Below, in pieces: positions 905-63,869 of a stretch of DNA of 64,000 nucleotides. The stretch is taken from positions 62,001 through 126,000 of IMG/VR virus record IMGVR_UViG_3300026078_000017. One strand, 5' to 3'. Under the pieces are notes generated by a model. It was not told where the DNA came from, made no database searches, and saw only the letters and a program-made list of their open reading frames with translations. How positions within the stretch are numbered: the first letter of the stretch is position 1; each line of letters starts with the position of its first letter. Both the position numbers and the translations under genes were made by a program.

Positions 905-910
905 GCCTGG

Positions 911-938: not shown

Positions 939-985
939 GCGTCTTCTGACAGTTAATTGACACGCCATCAATATATTTAAATGGC

Positions 986-1450: not shown

Positions 1451-1453
1451 TCC

Positions 1454-2998: not shown

Positions 2999-3011
2999 GA
3001 AAGAATTTCAA

Positions 3012-4709: not shown

Positions 4710-4716
4710 AATGAAA

Positions 4717-4738
4717 ATGGCGACCTTTTGGTCGCCAT
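4717..4738. terminator. intrinsic terminator between convergent genes, probably bidirectional
   Basis: ATGGCGACC-tttt-GGTCGCCAT 9-bp stem, with CTTTT on the right and AAAA on the left. Confidence 0.75.
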
Positions 4739-4763
4739 CTTTATCATAAAACTGTGAACTAGG

Positions 4764-5057
4764 TCAATCGTCAACAGCAGCCGTTTGCTGCATCAACTTA
4801 CGTTGTGCTTCTGCTTCCTCATTGAGCTTCATTACCATCTCATTATATGCCGAAACATATTCTGGAGTTACGGTAAGACGATCGTGACGATCCGTTGTGG
4901 GCTCAAGCTGAATTGCACGAAGATGGTCCACAATGTTTGTTCCAGTCAACAGGGACAACTGGACAATCTCACGAATCATGGAGATTGCGTCATCGGACAT
5001 TTGGAAAATGGCACGATTACTTGGAGGCGTTGGGGTTTGATTTTCTTGATCTGACAT
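4764..5057 (-). CDS. hypothetical protein
   Basis: 97-aa ORF in the minus-strand gene string, ending just before the terminator. Confidence 0.7.
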   Translation of the reverse strand: MSDQENQTPTPPSNRAIFQMSDDAISMIREIVQLSLLTGTNIVDHLRAIQLEPTTDRHDRLTVTPEYVSAYNEMVMKLNEEAEAQRKLMQQTAAVDD

Positions 5058-11332: not shown

Positions 11333-11578
11333 TTAGAATGAACCAGAGACCGAACCCGACATAAGCTGCCAGATTTGATTTGCAATATTTTGTTCAAGCT
11401 TGAACACAAGAGTTGGCTTACCACCATCATGAAGGTTCTGAAGCTGAGCAATTGGCACCTGTCTGATGCCAACATAAATGCGCGACACGCCATCTGTGTC
11501 TACAATACGACGTACTGTGTACGAAGAAGTAAGATACGTGTTTGTAAAGCCAAGAAAGGTTGAGTCAGGTGTAGTCAT
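11333..11578 (-). CDS. hypothetical protein
   Basis: 81-aa ORF; TAATTA 5 nt upstream. Confidence 0.6.
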   Translation of the reverse strand: MTTPDSTFLGFTNTYLTSSYTVRRIVDTDGVSRIYVGIRQVPIAQLQNLHDGGKPTLVFKLEQNIANQIWQLMSGSVSGSF

Positions 11579-11586
11579 GATTTTAA

Positions 11587-12237
11587 TTATTCTCCACCAA
11601 TCCCCATTCTTGGAGGATTATGGGAATATGGCTTTCTGTTGAGATTTTTCGAAACCTTTGCCATAACAGCCTTGGGTCCCTTTTGGTCAGAGTCATGACG
11701 ATCCATGTAAACCTCACCACCGCCAACCATGTTACGTCTAATAGAGTTTGTAGCCTTGTGTAAGCCCATCTTATCCAGAACGTTTTCCAGAATTTCTTCA
11801 ACGATTTCCCCAAGATAAGCTTGTGTTTGCTCTGACTCTGGCGTTGGAATGCCAACAAGGTGAGTTGTGATGGTTTCTGCTACATAACGAATCTTTGGTG
11901 GTTGAGCACCTGGCTTGTCTCCTTGCCAGAAGAAATCCCTGATTTGATCTCTGTGTTTTCCGTCATGAGTAACTGGACCGCTGGTTTCTCCGAAATTGTT
12001 AAAGTTCTCATCTGCGAGAGTACCGCCTCCATAAGGGGCAAGTAATGCTGCACCAGCAGAAACGCCATTAGCTTCTGAAACTTTCTTTTTGTCACCAGAC
12101 CACATAGTCTTGTGAGCTGGACCCATGTCCATTCCAAGGGGAGCACCACCAGTTGCACTAACTGCACCTGTTCCTACAGCGTTAAACTCGTCCAACTCTT
12201 GTTGAACCAGTTCCTCTATTAGTTGTTTAATCCCCAT
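11587..12237 (-). CDS. hypothetical protein with capsid-type leader
   Basis: MGIKQLIEELVQQELDE N-terminus; several internal [ILV]xE sites. Confidence 0.7.
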   Translation of the reverse strand: MGIKQLIEELVQQELDEFNAVGTGAVSATGGAPLGMDMGPAHKTMWSGDKKKVSEANGVSAGAALLAPYGGGTLADENFNNFGETSGPVTHDGKHRDQIRDFFWQGDKPGAQPPKIRYVAETITTHLVGIPTPESEQTQAYLGEIVEEILENVLDKMGLHKATNSIRRNMVGGGEVYMDRHDSDQKGPKAVMAKVSKNLNRKPYSHNPPRMGIGGE

Positions 12238-12859
12238 GTGTCATTCCTAGGTCGATACAGACGAGTCTGTTGTCTGGCGTAATACCCCAATGATCAAATC
12301 TGTCAATGTCGTCCATTCCAGCTTTTGTTAAATAGACGAACTTCCTGATAAGATCTTTTCCTCGTTTTGTAGGACGAACCTCATCGGCTTCTATGGGTTT
12401 CTTCTTTTTTTCGAATTCTTGAAATGCCTGAGCAGGGTCTTTTGGGGAGTTGTAGTTCTTCAGGAAGTCACCAAAGTGAATCAGCCAGTTTTCCGTAAGT
12501 CCGGTCGAACCAGTGAAGTCTTCATTTGTAGGCCATGTTTGTGCCCGTTCCACAATCATCCAGGCAAAATGTGGGTCATGGTCATAAATGACAGGACAGA
12601 AGTCCTTGCCAAAAGTCTCAAAGGCAGAGAACTCCATGGAACTTTGTTGAGCATCTGAGGCTATTTTGAGAACTTTGGTTGGAGTCAAGGCATAGGCAGT
12701 TCGTGCCATTCCATGCCCCAAAAGGACGAGTCCTGACTGTTTTGCATAGGCATTTCGTTCTTTATAGTTCCGAAGCTGCTTAAAATGCTCAAAGTCGAAG
12801 GATGCACCCTCGAAACTCTCCACAATTAAGGCTTCTAGGATTTCGCTTAGGAGTCCCAC
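12227..12859 (-). CDS. atypical protein-kinase-like protein (paralog 1)
   Basis: LLGHGMARTAY (Gly loop), KVLKIA (beta3 Lys), MEFSAFE (helix C Glu), DIDRFDHWG, IDLG (DFG-like). Confidence 0.7.
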   Translation of the reverse strand: MGLLSEILEALIVESFEGASFDFEHFKQLRNYKERNAYAKQSGLVLLGHGMARTAYALTPTKVLKIASDAQQSSMEFSAFETFGKDFCPVIYDHDPHFAWMIVERAQTWPTNEDFTGSTGLTENWLIHFGDFLKNYNSPKDPAQAFQEFEKKKKPIEADEVRPTKRGKDLIRKFVYLTKAGMDDIDRFDHWGITPDNRLVCIDLGMTHGD

Positions 12860-12867
12860 TCGGTTAA

Positions 12868-13542
12868 TTATACCGGCAAACCCTTGGAACGAAGAATTGC
12901 TTGCAACTTTTGCATGGAATCTTGTGGATTCTTGTGCAAAATGGCAATTCCGCCAGCGCTTTCAAACTTGGTCGTGTACTTGGTACGGTCATCGATCAAA
13001 ATCGAGTTAGGATTTGCGTACTTGTCCTTGTCCTGAGTACACACGAACTTGTCGAACATCCCAGGAAAATGGGAATCCATCCACTGTCGCTTTTCCTGCA
13101 TACAGCGTTCAATGTTGTTGTCTACAGGTGCCGTGAGAATACTTGGCTTACGACCAGTCATGGCTGCTGCCTGGGCAAGCATTTCCTTTGCTCCTGGCAT
13201 TTCTGGAAGATTGGCAAAGAAGCCCTCACGACCCGTCAGGGCGAACTTCTGTTCACGGTAGTGCTGCCATGCCTTCTTGAGAGCCTTGAGTCCAGGATCG
13301 GCTTGAGGACCCGCCAAACGCTTACGAAGCTCATCATCCGTGATGTGCATCAGGTCCGGGAAGTTTTTGAGCAATGCCATGTAGGTGTCACGTGCCTTTC
13401 CAGCACGTGGGTTTCCATCCAACACGCCTTGGTCGAAATCCGCCAGAACGCCATCCATGTCAAAGTAAATGACAGGCTCATTCAAGATGGACATTTCTGC
13501 CTCAACAATATTCTCGACCAAAATCTTTAATTCATCACTCAC
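12868..13542 (-). CDS. HAD-family 5'(3')-deoxyribonucleotidase
   Basis: IYFDMDGVLADF, ILTAP, EKRQW, ILIDDR. Confidence 0.88.
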   Translation of the reverse strand: MSDELKILVENIVEAEMSILNEPVIYFDMDGVLADFDQGVLDGNPRAGKARDTYMALLKNFPDLMHITDDELRKRLAGPQADPGLKALKKAWQHYREQKFALTGREGFFANLPEMPGAKEMLAQAAAMTGRKPSILTAPVDNNIERCMQEKRQWMDSHFPGMFDKFVCTQDKDKYANPNSILIDDRTKYTTKFESAGGIAILHKNPQDSMQKLQAILRSKGLPV

Positions 13543-14735
13543 AGAGCAAGTCTCCTAAAAAGTTCTGTTTCTCTACGTTCTTGTTCTTGTCCAAGCTCTT
13601 TACCAGAGAAACCCTGAGCCTGCAACTCAATTCCGGTTACTGAGTGTTCAAACTTGATAAATGCCTTCACCAAGTGGTCCTCAGGTTTTCCAACCATGTG
13701 GGAAAATTGGACCAAATCAGAATCTGACAACCGGGAGTTTTTGAAAAGCTTCTTTAATTTGTATGCATTCATCACAGAAAGTGACAAAAACATCGACAAA
13801 AATGACACTTGTGCCACTTCGTCCGCAGGGTATTTTAACTGATTGAGTTTGTTCATGAGAACCTTCCAAGGATTCTCTCTAAGCAAGTACCCAAGCATCA
13901 CAGGAATGTTTTTTGATTCCTTGAAGTCACGTGAGACAAGAAGTCCCGGAAAAATCTGTTCCCACAGATTGTACTCGGAAATCAGGTGAAAGAACTGAAC
14001 CACTGACTTGGCACTTTTGATGCCTTTCAAAAATTCATCCCTGATACGTTCGCCAGAAACTCCCTCAAGAGAGTTATTGGCCTTGATGGCTTGAGAAGTT
14101 GCGGGATCAAGTCCAGAACCAACTCGTGCAGCAAATCGAATTGCCCTGAGAATACGAAGTCGATCTTCATCGAATCGTTCTTCTGGTGAACCCACGGTAC
14201 GAATGACACCCTTTTCGATATCACCCATTCCACCAACATAGTCTACAATCTCTTGTTTCTCGATGTCGTAAAACAAGGCATTGATAGTCAAGTCACGACG
14301 TTGAACGTCCTGGTCGATACTGGTAAATGACACAGCATCTGGACGGCGTCCTTTTCCAATGTCCTGGCGGAAGGTGGCAATTTCGTACTCGTTTCCCTCG
14401 GGAGTGATAACTTTTACCACACCAAAGGACTTACCCACCTCCAAGATTTTGTAAGCAGGATTCTGTCTAAGAATCCCAACAACGTCATCCGGTTGAGCGT
14501 CTGTGGCAACGTCTAGGTCTTTTGGAGGCAGTCCCATGAGTGCATCACGAACAGACCCACCCACAAGGAAAAACTGTTTTCCGGCAGACTGAAACATCTT
14601 CGAAATCTGAAGAAGGTCTTCAGGCAGTGGAATATGAAATGACTTTCTTACCGGCTCAGCAGAAGACTCAGCAAGGATTTCATCAACATACTTGTTGACA
14701 AACTCAGACAGAAGGATTTCATGGGGTTTCTGCAT
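13539..14735 (-). CDS. cca: CCA-adding tRNA nucleotidyltransferase (class II; poly(A) polymerase family)
   Basis: LVGGSVRDALMG, KDLDVAT, RRDLTINAL, EDRLRILRAIRF, SGERIRDE. Confidence 0.9.
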   Translation of the reverse strand: MQKPHEILLSEFVNKYVDEILAESSAEPVRKSFHIPLPEDLLQISKMFQSAGKQFFLVGGSVRDALMGLPPKDLDVATDAQPDDVVGILRQNPAYKILEVGKSFGVVKVITPEGNEYEIATFRQDIGKGRRPDAVSFTSIDQDVQRRDLTINALFYDIEKQEIVDYVGGMGDIEKGVIRTVGSPEERFDEDRLRILRAIRFAARVGSGLDPATSQAIKANNSLEGVSGERIRDEFLKGIKSAKSVVQFFHLISEYNLWEQIFPGLLVSRDFKESKNIPVMLGYLLRENPWKVLMNKLNQLKYPADEVAQVSFLSMFLSLSVMNAYKLKKLFKNSRLSDSDLVQFSHMVGKPEDHLVKAFIKFEHSVTGIELQAQGFSGKELGQEQERRETELFRRLAL

Positions 14736-37571: not shown

Positions 37572-37925
37572 ATGTTAAAGAAAAAACCAGAAACCCTTGA
37601 TGAAATAATCCTCTCAGAAGCCAAAAAGGCCAAGGCTAGAGAAACCCTTATTACTGAAGGCAGTCTTTCTACAACTGGAAAGATTTTGTTTGCCTCGGTC
37701 GCTGCATACCTCGCTGGCAAGATAGCCTCTGGGTCATTTTTAAAGCTCCGTGGCAAGCCTGAGGAGCTTCGTGCAATGGCAGACGCTATCGTGGCTTCCA
37801 AAGCCTTCCTGGACGAACTGAAGCGTCCTGGAGCCACCATTGACAGCGTTATTGACAAAATGAACCTAAAGAACGTCACAACTGCCAAGTTTAAGCAGAT
37901 TACCGGTCAAAACTGGCCATTATAA
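37572..37925 (+). CDS. hypothetical protein with capsid-type leader
   Basis: ATG at 37572 preferred; TLDEIILSE...LITE leader; C-terminal TGQNWPL. Confidence 0.7.
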   Translation: MLKKKPETLDEIILSEAKKAKARETLITEGSLSTTGKILFASVAAYLAGKIASGSFLKLRGKPEELRAMADAIVASKAFLDELKRPGATIDSVIDKMNLKNVTTAKFKQITGQNWPL

Positions 37926-39711: not shown

Positions 39712-40014
39712 TTACAACTTAGACATGTCTAGCATGTCTTCTGTAGAAGGTGTTGGTTGTTCTGGTTTTGGGTTATGGCTTTTGTGAAGTTCAAGGGTTG
39801 CAACAGCGGATTTAAGAAGAGCAAGTGCTTTTTCAGGATCTCCACCGGCTCCTGCCATGGCGGTCATAATCAAGCTCCAGCGTCCTTTAAGTTTGCCTTG
39901 AGCCTGAAGGAGTTTCATTTTCTCCCAATCAATACCGAACATTCCGGCTTCCTGAAGCTTTTTGTCAACTGCCTCTCTAATGAGAGACCTAAGTTCTGTA
40001 AGGGAAATTTCCAT
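39712..40014 (-). CDS. hypothetical protein with capsid-type leader
   Basis: MEISLTELRSLIREAVDKKLQE N-terminus. Confidence 0.7.
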   Translation of the reverse strand: MEISLTELRSLIREAVDKKLQEAGMFGIDWEKMKLLQAQGKLKGRWSLIMTAMAGAGGDPEKALALLKSAVATLELHKSHNPKPEQPTPSTEDMLDMSKL

Positions 40015-40040
40015 ATTAGTTCAAATAAATGGTTAATATT

Positions 40041-40577: not shown

Positions 40578-41555
40578 TTAAATCCACTCGAATCCAAGGT
40601 TATCCATAATACTAGAAGCCAAATTCTCAGCTCTTTCGCAGACACCCGCAAACTCTGGGTCCTCGGACTGACAGTCTGCCAAAGCCTGAACGACTACTTT
40701 CATACCCTCTGGTGTGGACATTTTAGCCTCAGCCTCATGTGGGTTAAGTCCTGCAACTTCCATTGCAACTTCAAAAGCCTCACGGTCAGAACGACCAAGC
40801 TTCCAGTGCCAACCATTTGCCATTGCCTTGTGCCAAAGCTCTTCAGAAGGCATTTGTCCCCAGGTCATTTTGGCCAAATAGCCATGTTCATGACGGTCAT
40901 AGGGTTTTTCTGAAGGCTCCTCAGCTAAAGGGCTGGCTGCCTCTCCCATCTCATCAGACATTCCAAGCTTTTGCTTGAGTTCTGCCTTTCTGTGTTCGAG
41001 AGATTTTCTGGTCATGCCAGAAAGCATGTTGCTACCAGAAAGTTGGGATTCAATTCTCTCAAGTTCTGTGTGTGGATCTTCGCCTGGGTCAACATTGTGG
41101 TTATAACCCATTTCTTTACCAAGTAGGTCAAGTTCATCTGGGCCAAGTTCATTCAAGTCATCGGCAGTTGCCAAAATCTGGACGCCTGCAAGTGGAACAG
41201 CCTGCATTTTAATGCCATCACGGGTAATAGCAACCTTGTCACCACTAACCTGAACGACATAACCTGTCTTGCCATGGAATGCCACGAGGTCGCCTTCTGC
41301 TGGCATTTCACCCATGGACTCACGGAGCATCCTATTTTCCTTCAAACGGGCTGAGATGGCTTCCTTGACCATTGCACGAAGGTGTTCTACGGTAATCTTT
41401 TGAACGCCTTCATTTTGAGACTTCTCCTTGTCGTCCTTGATTTTCTCACGACGATCAGAAGCACTTTGCTTGGACTTGTTGAGTTGCAAGGCAACTGCCT
41501 CACGAACCATTTTCTGGAGTTCCTGAATGGAAACTTTTGTTACTTTTTCTGTCAT
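40578..41555 (-). CDS. hypothetical protein with two capsid-type leader motifs
   Basis: KVSIQELQKMVREAV and KITVEHLRAMVKEAI repeats. Confidence 0.7.
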   Translation of the reverse strand: MTEKVTKVSIQELQKMVREAVALQLNKSKQSASDRREKIKDDKEKSQNEGVQKITVEHLRAMVKEAISARLKENRMLRESMGEMPAEGDLVAFHGKTGYVVQVSGDKVAITRDGIKMQAVPLAGVQILATADDLNELGPDELDLLGKEMGYNHNVDPGEDPHTELERIESQLSGSNMLSGMTRKSLEHRKAELKQKLGMSDEMGEAASPLAEEPSEKPYDRHEHGYLAKMTWGQMPSEELWHKAMANGWHWKLGRSDREAFEVAMEVAGLNPHEAEAKMSTPEGMKVVVQALADCQSEDPEFAGVCERAENLASSIMDNLGFEWI

Positions 41556-42241
41556 ACTCTTGCTCCTGCGAAACCAGGCGTTGCGGGTTCATCTTCTGCA
41601 TCTACAACTCTTGAACCTACTACTCTTGGAGTTGCTTCTGGTCTATAACCTGCCAAAGCCTCAGCATCCTGTTCAAGGTTGTAACCCTGAGTACCTGCCT
41701 CTTTTGCCATAGCAGAAAGATATACTTCAATTCTCTTCTTCTCTTCCATCAAGGCATTATAGAACATGCCTACGACCTGAAGAACCTCACGCTCATACTT
41801 GCCTCTGGATTCCTGAGGAAGCGAGTCAAGCAAGTTGTAAAACTTACCAAAAAGGTCAAAAACGGAGTTTTGGAGAGTGTTGATTGCTTGTGAACTTCTA
41901 ATGGCATCTGCCTTGAAACTTGTTACTTGCTTTCTGGCATTTGCAATCGTCTTGTCCAACAAACCCTGGACCTGTTTAGGATCCGAGGTTCTGTGCTGAG
42001 GATCAACAAGGACGTTCTTGTTGTAGAAGTCCTTAGCTTTCATGTCGGCACCTAAATACTTGTTCTTGACCCAGCTCTTGGCTCTGTCAATCCAGTCAGC
42101 CTCATTGAGGTCCAACATTTCATTGATAAGAACAACTCTGTTTTCAAGCATGATTCTTTGAACCTGCTTGTTCTCAGAAAGTGCCTTTTTGACTGACTCG
42201 TTTATGGTTGCCTTAAGCAAGGCGGGTGTAACTTTGCTCAT
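41552..42241 (-). CDS. hypothetical protein with capsid-type leader
   Basis: MSKVTPALLKATINESVKKALSE...LINEMLDLNE. Confidence 0.7.
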   Translation of the reverse strand: MSKVTPALLKATINESVKKALSENKQVQRIMLENRVVLINEMLDLNEADWIDRAKSWVKNKYLGADMKAKDFYNKNVLVDPQHRTSDPKQVQGLLDKTIANARKQVTSFKADAIRSSQAINTLQNSVFDLFGKFYNLLDSLPQESRGKYEREVLQVVGMFYNALMEEKKRIEVYLSAMAKEAGTQGYNLEQDAEALAGYRPEATPRVVGSRVVDAEDEPATPGFAGARV

Positions 42242-49704: not shown

Positions 49705-50631
49705 TTAGGCTCTTCGTGCTGGACGTGCCGTTTTCACTGAATCTTGTGGAGGTCTTGGAGCTGCTGGTTCTTGTGAGGCAGGCTGCTGTTGAGACTGTTG
49801 TCCAACCAAGCCCTGAGGTTCTTCTGGAGTCTGTGATTGACCTTCTGGTGGAGCTGTGTGATCCATGGCATGACCTGAAGGGGTGTAGTACTTACCAGAA
49901 ACCTCACGAGTAAATCCATAGTCAAGCAAGACAACTCGACCATCTGCGGTGTATCCGTAGTGACCAATGGTATTGTCATCGGCTGCATCAAATCTAGCAA
50001 CGTCACCCACAGACAAGCTTTCGCTGACCAACATCATCATGGTCTTAACGAAGGGACTTTGAGCAGCTTTCTGATATTGGTCTACTCTACGTTTTGTAAT
50101 CAAGTAGATTTGTTTACTTGCGTGTTCTGCTTCTATTTCTTCAAGTCTCTCCTGCCACTTGGCAAGGGTTGCCTTAAGGTAGGCATCTGGGTTGCTTTGA
50201 TCTTCAGCTTCATTCCATCCGCGAATGACATCCACGTAAGTAGTAAATGACAAACCTGTGAGTTGTTGAAACTGGTCTGCGGACCTGAGAGGGTTTGCAA
50301 TTTCTGACACAAGCCAGGAGAAGGCAGTTTTGTCCCAGTCAAAGATAGCAGTGACTACACCCTTTGTTCTTGGGTCTCTAAAAATGTCATACTCTGCACG
50401 GTTCTGTGCAAGACCAGCTTTATTGATGGCGATCTTGAGAACCTTGCCACCACTGAGAGCAAATACCGCTCTAGAAGAACCATAACCCATTTCTGGAAGG
50501 TTCTGTTTGGCATAGTCAATTCTTAGATTTGGAGAACCAAGGGTTTTGAACTGAGCAAAGTTGAACTTACGAAGAACTTCCGAAATGGCTTCTTCTGTGA
50601 GTTGTTCTACTAGTGTCTTTAAAATACTCAT
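49705..50631 (-). CDS. atypical protein-kinase-like protein (paralog 2)
   Basis: MGYGSSRAVF, KVLKIA, QNRAE, WLVSE, GHYGYTADG, LLDYG. Confidence 0.72.
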   Translation of the reverse strand: MSILKTLVEQLTEEAISEVLRKFNFAQFKTLGSPNLRIDYAKQNLPEMGYGSSRAVFALSGGKVLKIAINKAGLAQNRAEYDIFRDPRTKGVVTAIFDWDKTAFSWLVSEIANPLRSADQFQQLTGLSFTTYVDVIRGWNEAEDQSNPDAYLKATLAKWQERLEEIEAEHASKQIYLITKRRVDQYQKAAQSPFVKTMMMLVSESLSVGDVARFDAADDNTIGHYGYTADGRVVLLDYGFTREVSGKYYTPSGHAMDHTAPPEGQSQTPEEPQGLVGQQSQQQPASQEPAAPRPPQDSVKTARPARRA

Positions 50632-50637
50632 ACGTCC

Positions 50638-51438
50638 TCAGTAATGCTTTCTCATGACTTCCATGGTTGCACCGAAGTCGAGAATTCTAATCTGTCCATC
50701 TGCCGTTCTACCAAAATGATTTGGGAACAAGTCATGTGGATTTAACTTGTGGGTATACTTCATGTTGTCAACATCAATCCAAAACTTGTGAGACAGTGGG
50801 TCATTAAGCAAGTCTTGTAGTTGATGATATTTCTGTGTGTATTTTTGCAGAGTACTTTGGGCATGAGCAAGATCCCACTGAGAAGTGTTTGGATCTGCCT
50901 TGGCTTTATTCAACTTGAGTTCCCAGTTTCTGATGTCGATATCGTAAGTGTCAAGCCAACCCTCAACAGTTTCTGGAGTTTCCAATATTACAGTCATCCA
51001 AAACTTTGGATCTATGTGGGTGTATTTCTCAAACTCTTCCCACTGAATTTCCTTGACAAGTTCTGAAATGAGCCACTTATAGTCAGGACTATAGTCAAAG
51101 ATTCTTGTAACCAAGGAGTTATCCTTGTTGTGAGTGAAAATCTCAAGCTCAGCTTGATTTTGAGAAATGCCTGCTGGATTCAGAGCAACCTTAAGAACCT
51201 TGCTTGAACTCAAGGCAAATGCCACACGAGAAGAACCTCTACCAAGTTCTGGAAGAAACTTCTTGGCATAGACAATCTCTGGGTGTTCCTTGCCAAGCCA
51301 AGCAAAGTCTTCTTCTTCGGATCTGTTACTAGGACGAACGTCTCCAGCAGAAATTTGCTTAAAGGTATTCAAGTTGAAGCCTCTGAAGGCTTCAGCAATT
51401 AACTCGTGAATCAGGTTTTCTAAAATACTGACTTTCAT
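50638..51438 (-). CDS. atypical protein-kinase-like protein (paralog 3)
   Basis: LGRGSSRVAF, KVLKVA, QNQAE, WLISE, DLFPNHFGRTADG, ILDFG. Confidence 0.75.
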   Translation of the reverse strand: MKVSILENLIHELIAEAFRGFNLNTFKQISAGDVRPSNRSEEEDFAWLGKEHPEIVYAKKFLPELGRGSSRVAFALSSSKVLKVALNPAGISQNQAELEIFTHNKDNSLVTRIFDYSPDYKWLISELVKEIQWEEFEKYTHIDPKFWMTVILETPETVEGWLDTYDIDIRNWELKLNKAKADPNTSQWDLAHAQSTLQKYTQKYHQLQDLLNDPLSHKFWIDVDNMKYTHKLNPHDLFPNHFGRTADGQIRILDFGATMEVMRKHY

Positions 51439-55858: not shown

Positions 55859-56725
55859 TTATTTCAACTTCACCTTACGGATTACTTTTGCGTAAGGTGC
55901 ATAAAATACAGTTGTACCCTCTGTGTTATTTAGGACGCTGATAGGTCCCTGAGGTTCAACCTCATAAACTGCTGGGTGTCCTCCAAGGGAGTGAACTGCT
56001 CTTCCTGCATAAATTAAGGCAGATCTTGGGTCTTTCGTGAAGAAAACCACATCAAGATTTTTCTTTCTTCCCTTCTCGGAAACCTTGTTGGTCTTGGAAG
56101 GAGGAAGGATTAGACTTCCAGGTTTGAAGTCATGAGAAGTCCCATGATAATAAACCGTGTGAGTGTTTTGATGTAAGTGACTTGCATCTTTTGGTTGATC
56201 GTCTTCACCCATAATAACTGCTGCTGAAGCTGGAGTGTTTGCTTCTGGATCCATGTCTGCCCAGTCTGTAGATTCTCCAAAAGGCATGTTGTGTTGATCG
56301 TAGGAATATTTTCTAAAGTCCTTGAATGGATCGTGTCTGATTTTATCATTCTTGGAACGAAGATACTTTGCCAATCCTCTACGATAAGCATGACCGAATG
56401 GAAGAAAGGTCATCCACCTTGTCCACTTGTCAAGTTTCTCCATGTCAGAACGGTTAAGCGTTGCTCTACCTTTTCTTTTTGTTAAGAGTTTGTTGATCAA
56501 CACGTCAATCTGAGCTTCCTCATGAGAAGCCTGTTGAGGTGTCATGGATGTGTCACGAAGTTTTTGTTTTGCCTTCTTCAAGGTTGACACCATGTGATCA
56601 TCTCCAGGAGTCATAAATGAGTCAGGACCAATGGTTTCAAAAACCATCGGAACTTCTTCTGTGATAACTTCCTTGACAATCTCTTCAATCAAGGCATGAA
56701 GAGACTCTTCGATCATTTTGGTCAT
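55859..56725 (-). CDS. leader-bearing protein with C-terminal Arr-like ADP-ribosyltransferase domain
   Basis: YYHGTSHDFKPGSLILP...VFFT...VYEVEPQG resembles the rifampin ADP-ribosyltransferase pattern FYHGT...PGDL...Y...IYxVEPTG. Confidence 0.7.
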   Translation of the reverse strand: MTKMIEESLHALIEEIVKEVITEEVPMVFETIGPDSFMTPGDDHMVSTLKKAKQKLRDTSMTPQQASHEEAQIDVLINKLLTKRKGRATLNRSDMEKLDKWTRWMTFLPFGHAYRRGLAKYLRSKNDKIRHDPFKDFRKYSYDQHNMPFGESTDWADMDPEANTPASAAVIMGEDDQPKDASHLHQNTHTVYYHGTSHDFKPGSLILPPSKTNKVSEKGRKKNLDVVFFTKDPRSALIYAGRAVHSLGGHPAVYEVEPQGPISVLNNTEGTTVFYAPYAKVIRKVKLK

Positions 56726-57342
56726 TATTTGTGCTTCTTGTTGTAGCGTGCCCAGGCGATCTGAAATGGACGAGGGGAATCCTCTCCGTACTTCTTCTTA
56801 AGGGCTAGAACCATGTCCTCAAGCCCTGGAGGTGCCTTCTCTGTCATAACTTGTTTGACAGCCTCATCAACCATTGCCTTAAGAGGGTCTTTTGCTTCTG
56901 GCATTCCTGGCTTGGACTTGGAAAGAATCTGCATCAAACCTTCTTTCTCTCGGATTGTCTTTGTGATAATCCCAAGAGCAGTGTTCATTTGGTCTTTTTC
57001 TTCTGGAGTTTGAGCATTCCCCAAGGCATCCATGATTTCCTGACGAACCTTCTCGTCTTCACCCATCGTGGTGAGAATATCACGAACAAGGTAGTTACTT
57101 TCCGCTTCCTTACCAATGTCGTCCATTGGATTTTCCTTGAGTTCATGACCAGTTTCGGCTGCATGTTGCATAGCCTGGTCACCATACTTTTTACGACCAA
57201 TAGAAGCAGCAACTGCTCCAGGATTGGTTACGCCCTTCTGGTGCGCAAGAGAACGCTTTAGTTTGTCAAAACCCATGTGCTTTTCCTGAATGGTTCTGTC
57301 AATCAGGGCTTCAAGAACATTTTCAAGTACAATCTTTTTCAT
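56725..57342 (-). CDS. hypothetical protein, probable internal head protein with small basic modules
   Basis: Leader ending TIQE; modules HMGFDKLKRSL...IGRKKYG and EKAPPG...QIAWARYNK. Confidence 0.7.
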   Translation of the reverse strand: MKKIVLENVLEALIDRTIQEKHMGFDKLKRSLAHQKGVTNPGAVAASIGRKKYGDQAMQHAAETGHELKENPMDDIGKEAESNYLVRDILTTMGEDEKVRQEIMDALGNAQTPEEKDQMNTALGIITKTIREKEGLMQILSKSKPGMPEAKDPLKAMVDEAVKQVMTEKAPPGLEDMVLALKKKYGEDSPRPFQIAWARYNKKHK

Positions 57343-59538: not shown

Positions 59539-61455
59539 TTAGATGACGTTCATGTCGAGAACGGTGACAGTTGCGTAGAAGTCTGCGCGAACCATCTTTT
59601 TGCCGTAGCGAGTCATGATACCCTTACGTGGAGTGAAGTCCTCCTGAGCGTAAATAACTGGTGTCAAGATGAGTGGAACGTATGGTGCGTAAATGTAACC
59701 CGACTCAAGGAAGGTGTTACCCTTAAGACCAATCAAAATGCGGTTTGCTGGGAAGTATGGGTCCTTGTAAACCGTGTAACGGTTGTTAAGGGTACCTGCG
59801 GACTCAGCGCCGAGTGTCATGCTGTCTTGGACTTGACCATCTGTGTCAATCTTGTAGGACGACTTGTAGGTCTGCAAGTGCTCAAGGATTGTGCAAACGT
59901 CTGGGGACGTTACGATGAAGTTTGCAGAACCGCGAAGCGTCTTACGTGCGATTGTGTTTGCTGCATCGGTAATAGTCTCAAGGAGCGTCTGGTACCAGTC
60001 TTGGACGTTGACGTAAGCTTGTGGGCCTGCGGACAATGCCGAAGAGTGGAGCGCTTCTGCGCCAGTCTGCTTGTTAACGATCTTACCTGGAGCGCGGGAC
60101 CAGTAAAGGTTTGCTGCGTTTGCCTGTGTAAGAAGGTCGTTGAGGATTTCACGGTCGATGTCGAGCGTGATGTGCTCAGAAAGAATGTTTGTCAATTCAA
60201 CTTCAACGTCGATGTTGTAGAACGCTGTAAGGTCTTGTGCCATTTCTGGTGACCAACGTGCGCGCAACTTACGGGTTGTTGCTGTTACTGCAACGGACTC
60301 AATCTTGATGTCAATCTCTGGGATGACAGGCGATGGAGGGTTGATTGCGAAATCAGTTTCGAACGAAGGAATCGTAAGAGTCGAACCATCGGAGTTAACC
60401 GAAAGTGCGTCAGAGATTGCAGCCGAAGCTGTTACCTTTGTTGTTGCTGTTGCGTTTGGCTGTGGAGCTGTACCACCGTTTGCCACGCGAATGACGAACT
60501 GAATGTGGGAGCCGCCGATTGGGTCTGGTGTGAACAAACCAGATGTTGGGTCCCAAGAACCGCGCTTGTTGAGCTTACGGAGGTTGAGAACGCCGTTACC
60601 ACCTTGATACTGATCGCCCCATGCAGTTGCCGAGCCTACTGCTGAACCGAAACCAGTGATTGCAATCTGCTCAAGCGAGTTGAGGTCTGCGCCACCGATG
60701 TTTGCAGTTACTTCAGATGCGGACATGTGAAGGAATACAAAGTCAAGGGCGTTGTTTGCAAGGTCAACTTCCATCTTGGAGTCGAAAAGAGCAAAACGTG
60801 CGTTGAAACCAACGAACTGTGCGCTTGTGCCAACGACTGCCGTTGTGCCAGTTGTCCAGATAGAACCCGATGCCCAGTAACCAACAGAGTCGGTCGTTGC
60901 ATTGAGGTTAAGGCTCTGCTTGTGAACCTTTGTGAAACCTGTGCCTACAAGGTCGTACTGACCACCAGTTGCAAAGGAGCCAGAACGAATTCTTGCGCCA
61001 ACTGGGTTATTGTAGATGGAGTCACCCTTCTTGTAGGTCTCGTTAACGGAGGAGTTCGACAAGTTTACACCTGCGTCGCCACCAACGTTGTTACCATACA
61101 TGTAATCGAGATAGAACAAAAGACCCGATGGCAAGCTCATTGGCTGCACGGAAACGACTTCATTTGCAATCAAGCCGGCGAATACACGACGGACGATTGG
61201 GAATGCGACGTTTGTGAAACCAGCTACTTGACCACTCGACACGAGGTTTGCACCACCGGTCGACAAAGCATTGGACTCACGAAGGAGTTCTGCTGCTTGG
61301 TTTTCAAGGAGACGACTCATCGAGTCACGGGTGTTGCCCTTGAGACCCGAGAGAAGACCTGTTTTGTCCCACTTCTCGTTAATGCGTGGCATGTCTGCGC
61401 CGAGGGACTTTCTCGAAACGCCTTCTGCAATCATGTCTAATGAAAATGACTTCAT
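59539..61455 (-). CDS. major capsid protein (T4 gp23-like)
   Basis: LLENQ, VSVQPMSLPSGLLFYLD, TRKLRARWSPEMAQDL, IDREIL, GYIYAPYVPL, TPRKGIMTRYG. Confidence 0.96.
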   Translation of the reverse strand: MKSFSLDMIAEGVSRKSLGADMPRINEKWDKTGLLSGLKGNTRDSMSRLLENQAAELLRESNALSTGGANLVSSGQVAGFTNVAFPIVRRVFAGLIANEVVSVQPMSLPSGLLFYLDYMYGNNVGGDAGVNLSNSSVNETYKKGDSIYNNPVGARIRSGSFATGGQYDLVGTGFTKVHKQSLNLNATTDSVGYWASGSIWTTGTTAVVGTSAQFVGFNARFALFDSKMEVDLANNALDFVFLHMSASEVTANIGGADLNSLEQIAITGFGSAVGSATAWGDQYQGGNGVLNLRKLNKRGSWDPTSGLFTPDPIGGSHIQFVIRVANGGTAPQPNATATTKVTASAAISDALSVNSDGSTLTIPSFETDFAINPPSPVIPEIDIKIESVAVTATTRKLRARWSPEMAQDLTAFYNIDVEVELTNILSEHITLDIDREILNDLLTQANAANLYWSRAPGKIVNKQTGAEALHSSALSAGPQAYVNVQDWYQTLLETITDAANTIARKTLRGSANFIVTSPDVCTILEHLQTYKSSYKIDTDGQVQDSMTLGAESAGTLNNRYTVYKDPYFPANRILIGLKGNTFLESGYIYAPYVPLILTPVIYAQEDFTPRKGIMTRYGKKMVRADFYATVTVLDMNVI

Positions 61456-61490: not shown

Positions 61491-63869
61491 TTACTTGCGA
61501 TTCTTAATTCCTGCCAAAAGCTGCCAACGTGCTGTTTCGATCTCGCCAGCCTTAGGCTGTGCGCTCTCGGTCAATCTTGCGCTTCCTGTCGAAGTAGGCT
61601 TCGAAGCCGAACCAGACAATTGGGTGGAAGATGTGCTTTCTGCGAGGATTTTCTTGATCTTGGTATAAGTCTCTTTTGCTTCTGCAAGGCTCTTAGCTTT
61701 GTCAAAATACGAAGCAATTTTTTGCTTCTGCGTCTTGGTCAAATCTTCACGAACTGCAAACTTGGAGACATACAAAGCCTTAGCTGTAAGAAGCTTAGAC
61801 TCTGAAAGTTGTGACTGGAGTGCTTTGACAGTTGTTGCTGCCTTAGCGATTACTGCTGCTTCTGTAAGAGGCTTTTTGGTAGAAGCTGGCTTCTTGGACT
61901 CCATTGGCATCTTAGATTCATCTTTACCTGGCTTGTCCTTGTCCATAAGCATGGAGGATGCGTCGTCGTCGTCTTTGCCTGCGCCCATCTCTGGTGCAGA
62001 GTCGCCGTCATCGCCTACAAGGTCAATACTAAGTGCATCGTCATCACCGGCACCGGCTGCTGCGCCCATTGCGTCGCCTGCTACTGGTTCTGCCGAAAAC
62101 TCTTCTGTTGCGCCATTAAGGAGAGCCTCAAGGTCATCAACGTCAATTTGGAAGGTAAGTTCTACTTCACCACCGCCAGCGCCTGCCATGTCATGCTCGC
62201 CACCTGCTGGTGCGTCTTCCATTGGCATCTTGGATGGACCTGCGCCCATTGGAGCTGCTGCACCTGGGGTGCCCATTGAGGTTGCATCCTCATTTTCCAT
62301 ACCACATTCCTTAAGTTCGGACTGTGCTGGAGCCTTGCCGCCTGCTGGCTTCTGGGAACCTTGATCGCCTTCTGGAACCGAAGGTGGCTTAAGGTGACCA
62401 TCTTTATCTGTACCCTTGAGAGCCGATTCTTTCTTTACGGCTGCAAGACGACGGGAAAGATTTTCCTTACGGAGTTTTGCAACTGCCTCACGGAGTTCCT
62501 TTTCGTCAAACTCAAGAATCGAGTTGTTACCCTTTTTGTCAATAAGAGCCTCACCAGAGTGAACCTTTGGAGAAGTGTTCTCTGCGCCCTTTGTCTTTTC
62601 GCCGTCACCGAAGTTAGACGATGCTGGTGCGGACTCTGCGATACCTGCACCTGGCTCCTTGATAAGAGCGTCTGGGTTGTGAACTCTTGGAGTCTTTGTC
62701 TGTGCATCACCCTCAACCTTGCCATCACCGAAGTTCGAGGATGCTGGTGCATCTTCACCAAGGAGGGACTCGGCCATATTGGACATTTCGCTGTCGTCTG
62801 CCTTTGGAGCTTCACCTTCTTTGAACAAGTCAACGCCAGGTGCTACGCCAGATGTCTTTTCTGCATGTGCAGTTGCTTTATCAGCGGTTGCTGGTCCGAG
62901 TGCGTCTTCCTCGAAAAGCTTTGCTGCAAATTCTTTGAGAGTGGTCATCGATGCTCCTTTATTCTCTTTGTAACTAGTAGTTGATTCTGCTTCATTCAGT
63001 TTCATGAACAAAAATTCAAGCTTATTTTCGGCCAAGCGAGCCTTTTTAGATGAAATAACGTCTTCATTGACCATCTCATCCAGTTTTTCACACAAGGTAA
63101 ATAGTTTCGATTTCAACGATTCTTTTACCAACATAGGTACGTTGCCCTTGAAATAAAGATAATCAATCTTTTCGGCAACCACGCGAACTTCTTCTTTGAA
63201 GCCAAAAATCTTAGCCTCACCAGCAACTACTGGTGTTGGTTCGTTTTCGTCTTCTGGGTTTGTTGGAGGAAGACCTGTTGGCGACGTTGGCGCCTCTGGG
63301 CCTTGCGTTGGTGCGGTGCCGGTTGGTCCGATTGGAGCCACAGGAGCAGGCGCAGCAGGTTGACCAGAACTTGCGTCAACCGGAGAAGCAGGGGGCGAAA
63401 CCATCTCAGGACTTGCTGGCGCATTAGGTGTTTCTCCTTGCGCACCAAGAGAATCCATGCCTCCCGCAACTGGAGGAGCTGCCTCAGCGCCGCCACCACC
63501 AAGTGAGAAAAGCTGCTGGAAATCTACGGTGATTTTGCCTTCATCATCTGGCATTGGCATTCCTACCAAACCATCCGATGGAGAGATTGGGGCAGCATTT
63601 GGCATGTCACCAGGGGTCATTGTAGGTTCCTCAGGAGAAACCTCGGCAGAAGACAAGGAAGCAAGGTCGCCTGTGTCTGCAACGCCGTCTATTCCACCAG
63701 GTGCATCTTCTTCACCAAACAAAAATCTGCTTGCGTCAGCAGCTTCTGTGGCGATCATTTTCTTGATCACTGGGGCTACAGCCTCGATGATTTTGTTTCT
63801 TGCATCGATCTCGGCTATTTCTTTGAGTTTCTTAGCCTCAATAATTGATTGTTTGTAAAGCTCGCTCAT
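61491..63869 (-). CDS. prohead core / scaffolding protein
   Basis: Acidic, Pro/Gly-rich; directly upstream of the MCP; many [IL]xE sites; C-terminal RWQLLAGIK. Confidence 0.8.
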   Translation of the reverse strand: MSELYKQSIIEAKKLKEIAEIDARNKIIEAVAPVIKKMIATEAADASRFLFGEEDAPGGIDGVADTGDLASLSSAEVSPEEPTMTPGDMPNAAPISPSDGLVGMPMPDDEGKITVDFQQLFSLGGGGAEAAPPVAGGMDSLGAQGETPNAPASPEMVSPPASPVDASSGQPAAPAPVAPIGPTGTAPTQGPEAPTSPTGLPPTNPEDENEPTPVVAGEAKIFGFKEEVRVVAEKIDYLYFKGNVPMLVKESLKSKLFTLCEKLDEMVNEDVISSKKARLAENKLEFLFMKLNEAESTTSYKENKGASMTTLKEFAAKLFEEDALGPATADKATAHAEKTSGVAPGVDLFKEGEAPKADDSEMSNMAESLLGEDAPASSNFGDGKVEGDAQTKTPRVHNPDALIKEPGAGIAESAPASSNFGDGEKTKGAENTSPKVHSGEALIDKKGNNSILEFDEKELREAVAKLRKENLSRRLAAVKKESALKGTDKDGHLKPPSVPEGDQGSQKPAGGKAPAQSELKECGMENEDATSMGTPGAAAPMGAGPSKMPMEDAPAGGEHDMAGAGGGEVELTFQIDVDDLEALLNGATEEFSAEPVAGDAMGAAAGAGDDDALSIDLVGDDGDSAPEMGAGKDDDDASSMLMDKDKPGKDESKMPMESKKPASTKKPLTEAAVIAKAATTVKALQSQLSESKLLTAKALYVSKFAVREDLTKTQKQKIASYFDKAKSLAEAKETYTKIKKILAESTSSTQLSGSASKPTSTGSARLTESAQPKAGEIETARWQLLAGIKNRK
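62606..62750 (-). repeat. internal 40-aa-period repeat in the scaffold protein
   Basis: APASSNFGDG encoded twice, 120 nt apart (62606-62630 and 62726-62750). Confidence 0.85.

What the first reader, a model, noticed from the sequence alone, without database searches (positions are those of the whole stretch)
11587..14735. Shared cleavable leader on unrelated enzymes: a candidate capsid-cargo addressing system
Seen: four consecutive genes start with similar amphipathic Leu/Glu-rich leaders ending in a [ILV]-x-E-type site just before the catalytic domain: MGIKQLIEELVQQELDE, MGLLSEILEALIVE (kinase), MSDELKILVENIVEAEMSILNE then PVIYFDMDG (HAD nucleotidase), MQKPHEILLSEFVNKYVDEILAE (CCA enzyme). 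The same type of leader occurs at 37572, 39712, 40578 (twice), 41552, 49705, 50638, 55859 (ART) and 56725. The scaffold and MCP carry similar sites. Known: T4 prohead protease gp21 cuts after [IL]-x-E and removes capsid-targeting leaders from internal proteins; cellular CCA enzymes and 5'-nucleotidases lack such extensions. Inference: about 12 proteins, including kinases, a tRNA-repair enzyme, a nucleotidase and an ART, are packaged and injected with the DNA.
Basis: partly seen in the sequence, partly recalled or inferred. Interest (0 to 1): 0.75.

Follow-up and report, generated by a model that had tools for sequence, protein, structure and literature searches.

The report
Capsid-address leader on phage enzymes
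A 320-kb uncultured T4-like phage puts the same short, probably cleavable N-terminal helix on about 20 unrelated proteins, including a tRNA CCA-adding enzyme and a nucleotidase. The helix most likely works like phage T4's capsid-targeting sequence, loading these proteins into the head, but no experiment shows this yet.

Summary
Four consecutive minus-strand genes (11587-14735) and at least seven more in the window start with a 14-24-residue amphipathic Leu/Ile/Glu helix that ends in [LIV]-x-E. The motif is 4-8 times commoner at N-termini than inside proteins (p 1e-6 to 1e-55). The whole 320-kb genome has about 19-20 such genes.

The phage belongs to the T4 superfamily. It has a gp23-like capsid protein and a Peptidase_S77 (gp21-type) prohead protease just beyond the window. 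The conserved small protein next to that protease carries the same kind of leader, and the leader is its best-conserved part.

- **CCA enzyme:** 99 of 108 distinct N-termini among environmental homologs have a variable helix with a near-invariant L-x-E 5-8 residues before the enzyme core. Nine natural leaderless versions start at the core.
- **Nucleotidase:** its homologs show the same pattern.
- **Solved cellular homologs:** they lack the extension.

The best reading is a T4-type capsid-targeting propeptide that has spread onto enzyme cargo (confidence about 0.6). Packaging, cleavage and injection are all inferred. Two points count against it: the four enzymes sit in a nucleotide-metabolism cluster, and the CCA enzyme has an obvious cytoplasmic job because the genome carries 38 phage tRNAs.

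The parts
13539..14735 (-). tRNA CCA-adding / poly(A) polymerase-family enzyme. The leader is residues 1-23 (nt 14667-14735), ending ILAE|S.
   Evidence: Pfam PolyA_pol 5e-34 and PolyA_pol_RNAbd. About 33 residues longer at the N-terminus than 1miv. AF2 gives helix 4-24 at pLDDT about 77 against 94-98 for the body. In homologs, L21 is kept in 53/62 and E23 in 60/64 sequences while the rest of the leader varies.
12868..13542 (-). NT5C-type HAD 5'(3')-deoxyribonucleotidase. The leader is residues 1-16 (nt 13495-13542), LKILVENIVEAE|M, followed by the normal start MSILNEPVIYFDMDG.
   Evidence: Pfam NT5C 1e-13. Solved homologs start 5-9 residues before DxDG. AGGAG lies 9 nt before the GTG start. 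The 30 closest homologs all carry the extension; distant ones start 2-5 residues before DxDG.
12227..12859 (-). Kinase-like protein 1 (phrog_4301). The leader is residues 1-14 (nt 12818-12859), MGLLSEILEALIVE|S.
   Evidence: phrog_4301. Paralog of 49705 and 50638. Orthologs P0244, P0245 and L103 keep the leader in frame, but database gene calls drop it.
11587..12237 (-). 216-aa protein of unknown family. The leader is residues 1-17 (nt 12187-12237), MGIKQLIEELVQQELDE|F, followed by a Gly/Ala linker. A second internal copy lies at about residue 141.
   Evidence: No Pfam or PHROG hit. The leader is 82% conserved with 7 synonymous changes against L103. Internal copy.
39712..40014 (-). 100-aa leader protein, MEISLTELRSLIREAVDKKLQE|A (leader nt 39949-40014).
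40578..41555 (-). 325-aa leader protein, ...VSIQELQKMVRE|AV (leader nt 41499-41555), with internal copies at residues 57 and 71.
41552..42241 (-). 229-aa leader protein, MSKVTPALLKATINESVKKALSE|N (leader nt 42173-42241).
49705..50631 (-). Kinase-like protein 2 (308 aa). The leader is MSILKTLVEQLTEEAISE|V (nt 50578-50631).
   Evidence: phrog_4301. In the AF2 model the leader is helix 2-22 at pLDDT 65-72 and the body is above 90. Foldseek hits are uniformly APH/protein-kinase-like, E 3e-4 with low TM 0.28-0.31. ESM Atlas neighbours agree.
50638..51438 (-). Kinase-like protein 3 (266 aa). The leader is MKVSILENLIHELIAE|A (nt 51391-51438).
55859..56725 (-). 288-aa protein with a C-terminal Arr-type ADP-ribosyltransferase domain. 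The leader is MTKMIEESLHALIEEIVKEVITEE|V (nt 56654-56725).
   Evidence: Pfam Arr-ms 9.6e-6, 26.2 bits against a cut-off of 25, and phrog_2110. The 54% ortholog L097 keeps the leader. In L098 the ART domain stands alone without one.
56725..57342 (-). 205-aa leader protein, MKKIVLENVLEALIDRTIQE|K (leader nt 57283-57342). It is the first gene of an operon with the ART.
   Evidence: The candidate late-promoter motif CCTATTTA lies 21 nt upstream.
37572..37925 (+). Weaker candidate, MLKKKPETLDEIILSE|A.
   Evidence: It was not picked up by the profile scans.
59539..61455 (-). gp23-like major capsid protein. The clade-conserved site LL[RK]E|S at about residue 60 corresponds in position to the T4 gp23 site LTE65|A.
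   Evidence: phrog_138 7e-74. tblastn to T4-superfamily capsid proteins. Alignment of 41 relatives. T4 sequence.
61491..63869 (-). 792-aa acidic, low-complexity scaffold-like protein, assigned by position (gp22 slot). It has 26 [LIV]xE sites and the C-terminal motif RWQLLAGIK.
   Evidence: No family hit. Site density 3.3 per 100 aa against a genome mean of 1.4. Its N- and C-termini are conserved in 71 loci.

Best explanation
The shared leader is a capsid-targeting propeptide of the T4 kind.

Proposed mechanism:
1. An N-terminal amphipathic acidic helix of 14-24 residues binds the scaffolding core of the assembling prohead. The cargo is therefore trapped when the gp23-like shell closes.
2. The gp21-type (Peptidase_S77) prohead protease, which acts inside the prohead, cuts after the Glu of the terminal [LIV]-x-E. 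This frees the mature protein.
3. The mature protein stays in the head with the DNA and enters the next host at infection.

In this uncultured clade the tag has spread from small internal proteins onto enzymes: a CCA-adding enzyme, an NT5C nucleotidase, three kinase-like paralogs, an Arr-type ART and about a dozen small proteins.

Shown:
- The leader exists, is translated and is under selection.
- It is portable across unrelated proteins.
- It ends in a conserved L-x-E.
- It is dispensable for the enzyme fold.
- It resembles the N-terminus of the conserved protein next to the protease.
- The protease is present with its His and Ser conserved.

Inferred: binding to the core, cleavage, packaging and injection.
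For: 1. T4-type head module: gp23-like capsid protein and Peptidase_S77 at G000 127011-127439, 93 bits (phrog_207). His82 and Ser136/137 are invariant in 36 sequences including T4 gp21. The capsid protein has a conserved L-[RK]-E|S site.
2. The 159-aa protein encoded between protease and scaffold starts MKLTRSQFKGLMKECLTELINEG. In relatives this N-terminus is often the only part that still aligns. A PSSM built from it in other phages finds the N-termini of the ART, kinase-like proteins and CCA enzyme here.
3. Portability: in 80 loci around the capsid gene, 9.5% of ORFs carry the helix at the N-terminus against 1.2% internally. Together with this genome's own leader proteins they fall into 58 clusters by mature part, at least about 45 after likely false positives are removed. 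This is like the T-even internal proteins, which share "only a conserved CTS" (PMC3012670).
4. CCA family: 99 of 108 distinct N-termini have the helix plus h-x-E 5-8 residues before VRKKF, and 9 natural versions start at VRKKF. The NT5C family shows the same gradient.
5. Solved cellular homologs lack the extension.
6. AF2 models the leader as a separate N-terminal helix with lower confidence than the body.
7. T4 precedent from real sequences: ipII/III MKTYQEFIAE, Alt MELITE, gp68, gp22 and gp24 all end in [LI]xE. Their removal by gp21 and the sufficiency of the CTS for packaging foreign proteins are reported in PMC5694885 and PMC9026906.
8. All leader genes lie in the first 132 kb. Most are in or next to head, neck or tail operons, and one operon (56725 plus the ART) follows the candidate late-promoter motif.
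Against: - There is no virion proteome, N-terminal sequence or expression-timing data. The clade has no cultured member in the phage collection.
- The four genes of the finding lie among ThyX, RNR and other nucleotide-metabolism genes, and have no TATTTA motif within 70 nt upstream.
- The CCA enzyme has an obvious cytoplasmic role, since the genome carries 38 phage tRNAs.
- The leader does not resemble the T4 CTS in sequence, and the core protein shows no profile similarity to T4 gp67 or gp68.
- The protease plus nucleotidase complex prediction gave no answer.
- Leader pLDDT of about 77 does not exclude that the helix packs on the enzyme.
- Some leader proteins also carry internal copies of the motif.
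Confidence: 0.6

Rival explanations
1. The leader is a general docking or oligomerisation helix. It would tether the proteins to each other or to a cytoplasmic complex, for example a nucleotide-synthesis or tRNA-maturation assembly like the T4 dNTP synthetase complex. No packaging would be involved.
For: The four enzymes sit in a nucleotide-metabolism cluster with ThyX and RNR. The heptad-like amphipathic pattern suits coiled-coil pairing. The CCA enzyme is needed in the cytoplasm for 38 phage tRNAs.
Against: The same helix heads the conserved protein next to the prohead protease, and dozens of small ORFs flanking the capsid gene. The only near-invariant residues are the L and E of a protease-type site at the leader/enzyme boundary. 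Natural leaderless enzymes exist.
Confidence: 0.2
2. The leader is a propeptide used only for regulation. It would hold the enzymes inactive or mark them for timed cleavage or turnover, and any presence in the head would be incidental.
For: The h-x-E is conserved exactly at the start of the enzyme core. Longer fusion proteins have the leader-like segment as an internal linker, which looks like a polyprotein.
Against: T4-type prohead proteases act inside the prohead (PMC5694885), so cleavage by one implies being there. The leader is far from the active sites in the CCA model. Many leader proteins are small and non-enzymatic.
Confidence: 0.08
3. The leader targets the proteins somewhere other than the head, for example the tail or baseplate during assembly, the membrane, or the phage-encoded Cpn60 chaperonin.
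For: Three leader genes (39712-42241) lie between the baseplate hub and the sheath genes. A Cpn60 gene lies 6 kb from the head module.
Against: The leaders are acidic, so they are not membrane anchors. The closest match is the head-module core protein. No test bears on the chaperonin idea.
Confidence: 0.07
4. The resemblance is compositional chance, or a side effect of codon choice at gene starts.
For: The leaders are short and low in information. PSSM scores are modest. DNA similarity is at background level.
Against: Positional enrichment has p-values from 1e-6 to 1e-55. The hydrophobic periodicity and the L-x-E are conserved over more than 100 homologs in two unrelated enzyme families. Synonymous-change patterns show selection on the peptide.
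Confidence: 0.03

Closest known systems
Phage T4 capsid-targeting sequence (CTS) of internal proteins IPI-III and Alt, removed by prohead protease gp21
   Same: Both are short N-terminal propeptides ending in [LI]-x-E on otherwise unrelated proteins. Both genomes have a gp21-family protease in a gp20-21-22-23-type head module. In both, an ADP-ribosyltransferase is among the tagged proteins.
   Different: There is no sequence similarity to MKTYQEFIAE. The leader here is longer (14-24 residues) with a clear heptad-like amphipathic pattern. The cargo includes housekeeping-type enzymes (CCA-adding enzyme, NT5C nucleotidase, kinase-like fold) rather than small basic anti-restriction proteins. Function is untested here.
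Long propeptides of ejection and inner-body proteins in phiKZ-like giant phages (phiKZ, SPN3US, 201phi2-1)
   Same: Many head-internal proteins, including enzymes (vRNAP subunits), are processed by a gp21-related protease after x-x-E. The propeptides are thought to act in targeting (PMC5694885).
   Different: Those propeptides are mostly over 100 residues long and the cleavage motif is A/S/G-x-E. They belong to a different capsid lineage within the T4-like protease users. The phage here is a closer T4 relative by capsid protein.
Encapsulin cargo-loading peptides and scaffold C-terminal coat-binding peptides (e.g. P22)
   Same: These too are short terminal peptides that address unrelated enzymes to the interior of an HK97-fold shell. 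The scaffold C-terminal motif RWxxLAGI noticed here, reused at the termini of other proteins, is analogous.
   Different: Encapsulin tags are usually C-terminal, are not cleaved, and bind the shell protein itself. No homology was tested or is claimed.

Membership tests
T4-type CTS / prohead-protease propeptide system | A gp21-family (Peptidase_S77) prohead protease is encoded in the head module | tested here: met
   PF03420 at 93.3 bits, above the cut-off, at G000 127011-127439. phrog_207 1e-47. His82 and Ser136/137 are invariant, T4 gp21 included.
T4-type CTS / prohead-protease propeptide system | Cargo carries a short N-terminal propeptide ending in [L/I]-x-E | tested here: met
   All 11 window leaders end in [LIV]-x-E. 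L and E are near-invariant at the CCA boundary. T4 reference sequences.
T4-type CTS / prohead-protease propeptide system | Only the leader is shared among otherwise unrelated cargo | tested here: met
   58 clusters by mature part, at least about 45 of them credible. Exception: the three kinase-like paralogs.
T4-type CTS / prohead-protease propeptide system | Sequence similarity to the T4 CTS (MKTYQEFIAE) or homology of core proteins to gp67/gp68 | tested here: not met
   The leaders differ from the T4 sequences. hhalign of the core-protein profile against gp68 and gp67 gave probability below 1%.
T4-type CTS / prohead-protease propeptide system | The propeptide is cleaved by the prohead protease | not testable with these tools
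   The complex prediction of protease plus nucleotidase gave no answer.
T4-type CTS / prohead-protease propeptide system | The leader is sufficient to put a protein into the prohead, and the cargo is present in virions and ejected | not testable with these tools
   There is no cultured relative and no proteome.
T4-type CTS / prohead-protease propeptide system | Cargo genes are expressed when heads assemble (late) | tested here: inconclusive
   The candidate late motif NTATTTA precedes structural genes and the 56725/ART operon, but not the four-gene cluster. RNA runs hold only relatives and give no timing.
Class II CCA-adding enzyme / poly(A) polymerase family | PolyA_pol head domain plus RNA-binding domain | tested here: met
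   Pfam 5e-34 and 4e-9. PDB hits 1e-36 to 1e-39. AF2 pLDDT 93.7. CCA-adding versus poly(A) activity was not resolved.
NT5C 5'(3')-deoxyribonucleotidase (HAD superfamily) | NT5C profile and HAD motif I (DxDG) | tested here: met
   Pfam NT5C 1e-13. FDMDGV at residues 27-32. PDB hits.
Protein-kinase-like (APH/ePK) fold | Bilobal kinase fold with a Gly-rich loop, the Lys of VAIK, and catalytic and DFG Asp residues | tested here: inconclusive
   Foldseek top 50 hits are almost all APH or MTR-kinase, E 3e-4, but TM is only 0.3. ESM Atlas neighbours are APH, RIO and Pkinase. GxGxxR, KVLK and DxG are conserved. There is no Pfam hit and the catalytic-loop motif is atypical.
Arr-type ADP-ribosyltransferase | Arr-ms domain profile | tested here: met
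   PF12120 9.6e-6, 26.2 bits against a cut-off of 25, residues 192-264. This is marginal, and catalytic residues were not checked.

The most novel reading that the evidence does not exclude
A widespread uncultured clade of T4-superfamily phages, found in rhizosphere, freshwater, wastewater and marine samples, uses a modular capsid address code made of two terminal tags. One is the cleavable N-terminal L/E helix. The other is the scaffold's own terminal RWxxLAGI peptide. With these the phages pre-load heads with a changing set of enzymes: tRNA 3'-end repair, nucleotidase, kinase-like and ART. The ejected proteome could then be read directly from metagenomic sequence, and tRNA repair and nucleotide-directed activities would act at time zero against host defences.
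Probability: 0.3. Interest if true: 0.75.

Novelty: new variant of a known kind. Interest (0 to 1): 0.58.

Why it matters
In T4 the CTS is known for a handful of small anti-restriction proteins and for Alt. If the leader here does the same job, three things follow.

- The mechanism is an evolvable general-purpose address in a large uncultured branch of T4-like phages. It is used for ordinary enzymes that nobody expects inside a capsid, namely a tRNA CCA-adding enzyme, a deoxynucleotidase and kinase-like proteins.
- There would be a simple sequence rule (N-terminal amphipathic helix plus L-x-E before the domain) for predicting injected proteins from metagenomes.
- It would point to early-acting counter-defence or take-over functions, such as repair of tRNA ends and removal of nucleotides or nucleotide signals.

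It also shows that gene callers routinely drop these leaders.

Tried and rejected
- **Complex prediction:** protease (33-row alignment) plus nucleotidase scored 0.07 against a mark of 0.32. This gives no answer and is not evidence either way. I rebuilt it without them.
- **T4 late promoter:** TATAAATA is depleted (3 found, 22 expected), so it could not be used for timing. A candidate NTATTTA motif was found instead, but it is absent upstream of the four-gene cluster.
- **Sigma-70 and terminator scan of 9.5-20 kb:** no more sites than in shuffled sequence.
- **Homology of the core protein to T4 gp67/gp68:** none. PHROGs has no family for the core protein, the scaffold or the 297-aa protein.
- **Cultured relatives:** megablast of the locus and tblastn of the core protein against 50,697 phage records found nothing.
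- **Recent DNA cassette idea:** leader DNA identity equals that of internal controls.
- **RNA evidence:** the source is a rhizosphere DNA metagenome. RNA libraries hold only contigs of relatives (less than 90% alike; most under 90%, one 90-95%), which give no timing or 5' ends.
- **T4-CTS-like MKTFKEF on marine NT5C homologs:** T4 Acb1 (MMEFKDF) starts much like the Acb1 homolog beside them (MKSFKEY), so that start may be a family feature, not a tag. I gave it little weight.
- **Scaffold [LIV]xE density:** only 2.3 times the genome mean, so this is weak support.


Full report
**What the window is.** The window is bases 62001-126000 of a single 320,479-bp virus record from IMG/VR (CheckV completeness 81%, GC 44%). 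The only run holding the sequence in full is a rhizosphere DNA metagenome. The phage belongs to the T4 superfamily.
- The 638-aa protein at 59539-61455(-) matches the gp23-type major head protein family (phrog_138, 7e-74). By tblastn it finds 2,520 T4-like phages, the best at 45% (Flavobacterium phage immuto).
- Just beyond the window's end lies a Peptidase_S77 (T4 gp21) prohead protease, with 93 bits against PF03420 and phrog_207 at 1e-47. His82 and Ser136/137 are invariant across 36 sequences, T4 gp21 included.
- Gene order on the minus strand is: portal, a 297-aa protein, the protease, a 159-aa protein, a 160-aa protein, a 792-aa acidic scaffold-like protein, then the capsid protein. This is the T4 20-21-22-23 layout with different small core proteins.
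- No cultured phage in a collection of 50,697 records is close. IMG/VR holds at least 600 contigs with a capsid protein related to this one; the 80 kept are 54-92% identical.

**The observation.**
- 13539-14735 is a CCA-adding / poly(A) polymerase-family enzyme (PolyA_pol 5e-34).
- 12868-13542 is an NT5C-type HAD deoxynucleotidase (1e-13).
- 12227-12859 belongs to phrog_4301.
- 11587-12237 has no family.
- The other quoted genes exist too. The one at 37572 is a plus-strand internal ATG and a weaker match.

- Three or more [LIV]xE in the first 25 residues: 16/437 N-termini against 14/3028 internal windows (p=8e-8).
- A helix pattern h..hh.E.h near the start: 18/467 against 36/4129 (p=3e-6) in this genome, and 117/1228 against 205/16949 (p=3e-55) in the 80 related loci.
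- Genome-wide there are about 19-20 leader genes, all in the first 132 kb. They include a run of five small ones at G000 11504-14042.

The leaders are translated and under selection.
- The HAD GTG start has an AGGAG 9 nt upstream.
- Against a 70-83% relative (L103), all four leaders are kept in frame, with synonymous changes beside conserved residues. The 216-aa protein, for example, has 7 synonymous and 3 replacement changes in 17 codons.
- Gene callers nevertheless drop the leader of the kinase-like gene.
- Leader DNA is no more alike than internal controls, so these are not recent cassette copies.

**Extension relative to homologs.**
- Against solved structures, the CCA enzyme has about 33 extra N-terminal residues (1miv aligns query 40 to chain 7). 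The nucleotidase has about 16-20.
- Among the 120 best environmental homologs of the CCA enzyme (55-88% identity, many on contigs of 200-470 kb), 99 of 108 distinct N-termini carry a helix of variable sequence. It ends in h-x-E, mostly (81 of 99) 5-8 residues before the conserved VRKKF strand that opens the enzyme. Nine natural versions start at VRKKF with no leader.
- Column by column, the hydrophobic positions follow a heptad-like pattern and the polar ones vary freely. Only L21 (53/62) and E23 (60/64) are nearly fixed.
- More distant phage orthologs (45% and 38% identity) have no leader.
- The nucleotidase family repeats this. The 30 closest homologs all have an extension (median 23.5 residues) with h-x-E. 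The most distant 28 have a median of 9 residues, and 13 of them have 6 or fewer before DxDG.
- AF2 models the CCA leader as one helix, residues 4-24, at pLDDT about 77 against 94-98 for the body. It is followed by a short linker and the first strand. The kinase-like protein shows the same arrangement.

**Link to the head.**
- The 159-aa protein encoded between the protease and the scaffold starts MKLTRSQFKGLMKECLTELINEG. Its relatives in most of the loci held that reach this gene start [FL]KxI[IV]KECL[IV]EIL[AS]EG. In many pairs these 24 residues are the only part that still aligns.
- A PSSM built from those N-termini in other phages only, scanned over this proteome, puts 10 of its top 30 hits at N-termini (2.2 expected, p=3e-5). 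Those hits include the ART, two kinase-like proteins, the CCA enzyme and several small proteins.
- Around the capsid gene of relatives, the same leader (typically MK[LI]T.xQL[KR]xI[IV]xE[EA][IV]) heads proteins that fall into dozens of unrelated clusters by mature part. One is an independent HAD hydrolase.
- The capsid protein has a clade-conserved LL[RK]E|S at about residue 60, shortly after the ENQ motif that it shares with T4 gp23. T4 gp23 is cut at LTE65.

**What is known.** In T4, the internal proteins and Alt associate with the scaffolding core through a 10-19-residue N-terminal capsid-targeting sequence. gp21 then removes these propeptides, together with those of gp23 and gp24, and fragments gp22, gp67 and gp68. 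The CTS alone packages foreign proteins such as GFP (PMC5694885, PMC9026906, PMC3012670). The real T4 N-termini fetched here all end in [LI]xE: ipII/III MKTYQEFIAE, ipI ...ITE, Alt MELITE, gp22 MLKEQLIAE, gp68 ...ENVEALIPE, gp24 MAKINE. The review PMC9026906 already suggests that the CTS may be a general way for T4-like phages to incorporate varied proteins. Alt, an ADP-ribosyltransferase, is the T4 counterpart of the leader-bearing ART here.

**Best explanation and its limits.** The most economical reading is that the leader is this clade's version of the CTS. It would bind the core, be cut after the Glu by the S77 protease inside the prohead, and leave the mature enzyme in the head for delivery. 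I put this at about 0.6.

Points against it:
- There is no proteomic or timing evidence.
- The four enzymes lie among ThyX, RNR and similar genes, without the candidate late motif NTATTTA that precedes many structural genes and the 56725/ART operon.
- The CCA enzyme is plainly useful in the cytoplasm, because the genome has 38 tRNAs, a tmRNA and a Thg1-like enzyme.
- The leader is unlike the T4 CTS in sequence, and the core protein shows no similarity to gp67 or gp68.
- The complex prediction gave no answer.

The main rival is a cytoplasmic docking or oligomerisation helix (0.2). It does not explain the near-invariant protease-type site at the boundary, or the match to the head-module protein. 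Regulation-only propeptide, other destinations and chance are less likely.

- The three "kinases" are paralogs (27-31% identity) with aligned leaders, so they count as one case.
- Their kinase nature is supported only at fold level. Foldseek hits are almost all aminoglycoside phosphotransferase or MTR kinase, at E 3e-4 but TM 0.3. ESM Atlas neighbours agree, and there is no Pfam hit.
- The ART call rests on a marginal Arr-ms match (26.2 bits against a cut-off of 25) plus phrog_2110.
- The scaffold's [LIV]xE density is only 2.3 times the genome mean.

**Novelty.** The mechanism is of a known kind. What is new is a leader of different sequence and length, in a large uncultured branch of T4-like phages. 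In the CCA family 99 of 108 distinct N-termini carry it, as do all 30 closest NT5C homologs, along with many other proteins. I found no paper describing this. A second possible tag turned up in passing. The scaffold's extreme C-terminal motif [RK]Wxx[L]AG[IL] is conserved in 71 loci. It recurs at the N-terminus of small ORFs beside the capsid gene in two relatives, and at the N- or C-terminus of several NT5C homologs from other phages. This fits the idea that nucleotidases are recurrent capsid cargo, but it was not followed further.

Noticed in passing
window 61491-63869 (scaffold C-terminus, nt 61491-61535); L013:21395-21757, L015:12723-13642; proteins P0165, P0170, P0197-P0203, P0224, P0005: The scaffold ends in ...RWQLLAGIKNRK. 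The motif [RK][WFM]xx[L]AG[IL] is at the extreme C-terminus of the scaffold in 71 related loci. It also occurs at the very N-terminus of small ORFs next to the capsid gene in two relatives, and at the N- or C-terminus of NT5C nucleotidase homologs from other phages. In the fusion protein P0005 it sits directly before the CCA leader. It may be a second capsid-address tag.
   Followed up: partly
G000 126424-126903 (just beyond the window end) and L001:914-1393: The conserved 159-aa head-module protein has a second conserved end, a C-terminal W[AS]xLAF motif, besides its N-terminal leader. It has no PHROG or Pfam family and no detectable similarity to T4 gp67 or gp68.
   Followed up: partly
G000 90-4053, 137491-166047 and 256656-256727 (outside the window): The genome carries 38 tRNA genes, a tmRNA (tag AADNAPLALAA) and a tRNA with anticodon CTA that would read TAG. 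Standard-code ORFs still cover 90% of the genome.
   Followed up: no
window 986, 38749, 45311, 48436, 51435 and 56725 upstream regions, and elsewhere in the genome: NTATTTA lies 5-20 nt upstream of the start of many structural genes and is 13-fold enriched in upstream regions. The T4 late promoter TATAAATA is depleted (3 found, 22 expected). NTATTTA is a candidate late promoter.
   Followed up: partly
window 55068-55817 (-) and 54236-55099 (+): A Thg1-like tRNA 5'-end guanylyltransferase (1.7e-27) and an ADP-ribosylglycohydrolase (1.3e-36) lie directly beside the leader-bearing ART. With the CCA enzyme, the phage thus encodes enzymes for both tRNA ends, and both a writer and an eraser of ADP-ribose. 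Neither of these two has a leader.
   Followed up: no
window 42253-45252 and 45311-48349 (-): Two tandem tail-sheath paralogs of about 1000 aa each, roughly twice the usual sheath length.
   Followed up: no
window 58765-59439 (-); L004:249-947 and 4125-4943: A GIY-YIG homing-endonuclease gene lies next to the capsid gene. In relative L004 the CCA gene is interrupted, only its C-terminal two thirds being found downstream of such an endonuclease gene. L005 and L006 likewise match only from CCA residue 129 on; no endonuclease gene was identified there.
   Followed up: no
G000 133902-135644 (L095:7902-9644): A phage-encoded Cpn60/GroEL-type chaperonin (6.7e-58) lies 6 kb from the head module.
   Followed up: no
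G000 11504-14042 (L093:1504-4042): Five consecutive small genes (97-268 aa) all carry leaders (MKVTKTQLQKMVNEAV, MKITQSELKKLVQETV and similar). One is preceded by TATTTA. This may be the equivalent of a T4 internal-protein locus.
   Followed up: partly
proteins P0005, P0006, P0011, P0027, P0035-P0037, P0040, P0041, P0044, P0046 and others: 24 CCA homologs are 500-680 aa long, with an extra N-terminal domain joined to the enzyme through a leader-like helix plus L-x-E. One of them carries an AAA_33 kinase domain. They may be polyproteins cut at that site.
   Followed up: no
L101:7089-8522 (Tara Oceans contig): Three consecutive genes (Acb1, a 148-aa ORF and an NT5C nucleotidase) start MKSFKEY, MIKSFKQF and MKTFKEF, close to the T4 IPI/IPIII starts MKTFKEF and MKTYQEF. 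T4 Acb1 itself starts MMEFKDF, so this may be a family feature rather than a tag.
   Followed up: partly
window 12823-12859: The public gene call for the kinase-like gene (P0241, 198 aa) starts at an internal GTG and omits the leader. The same happens in relative L103. Leaders of this kind are probably under-annotated.
   Followed up: yes
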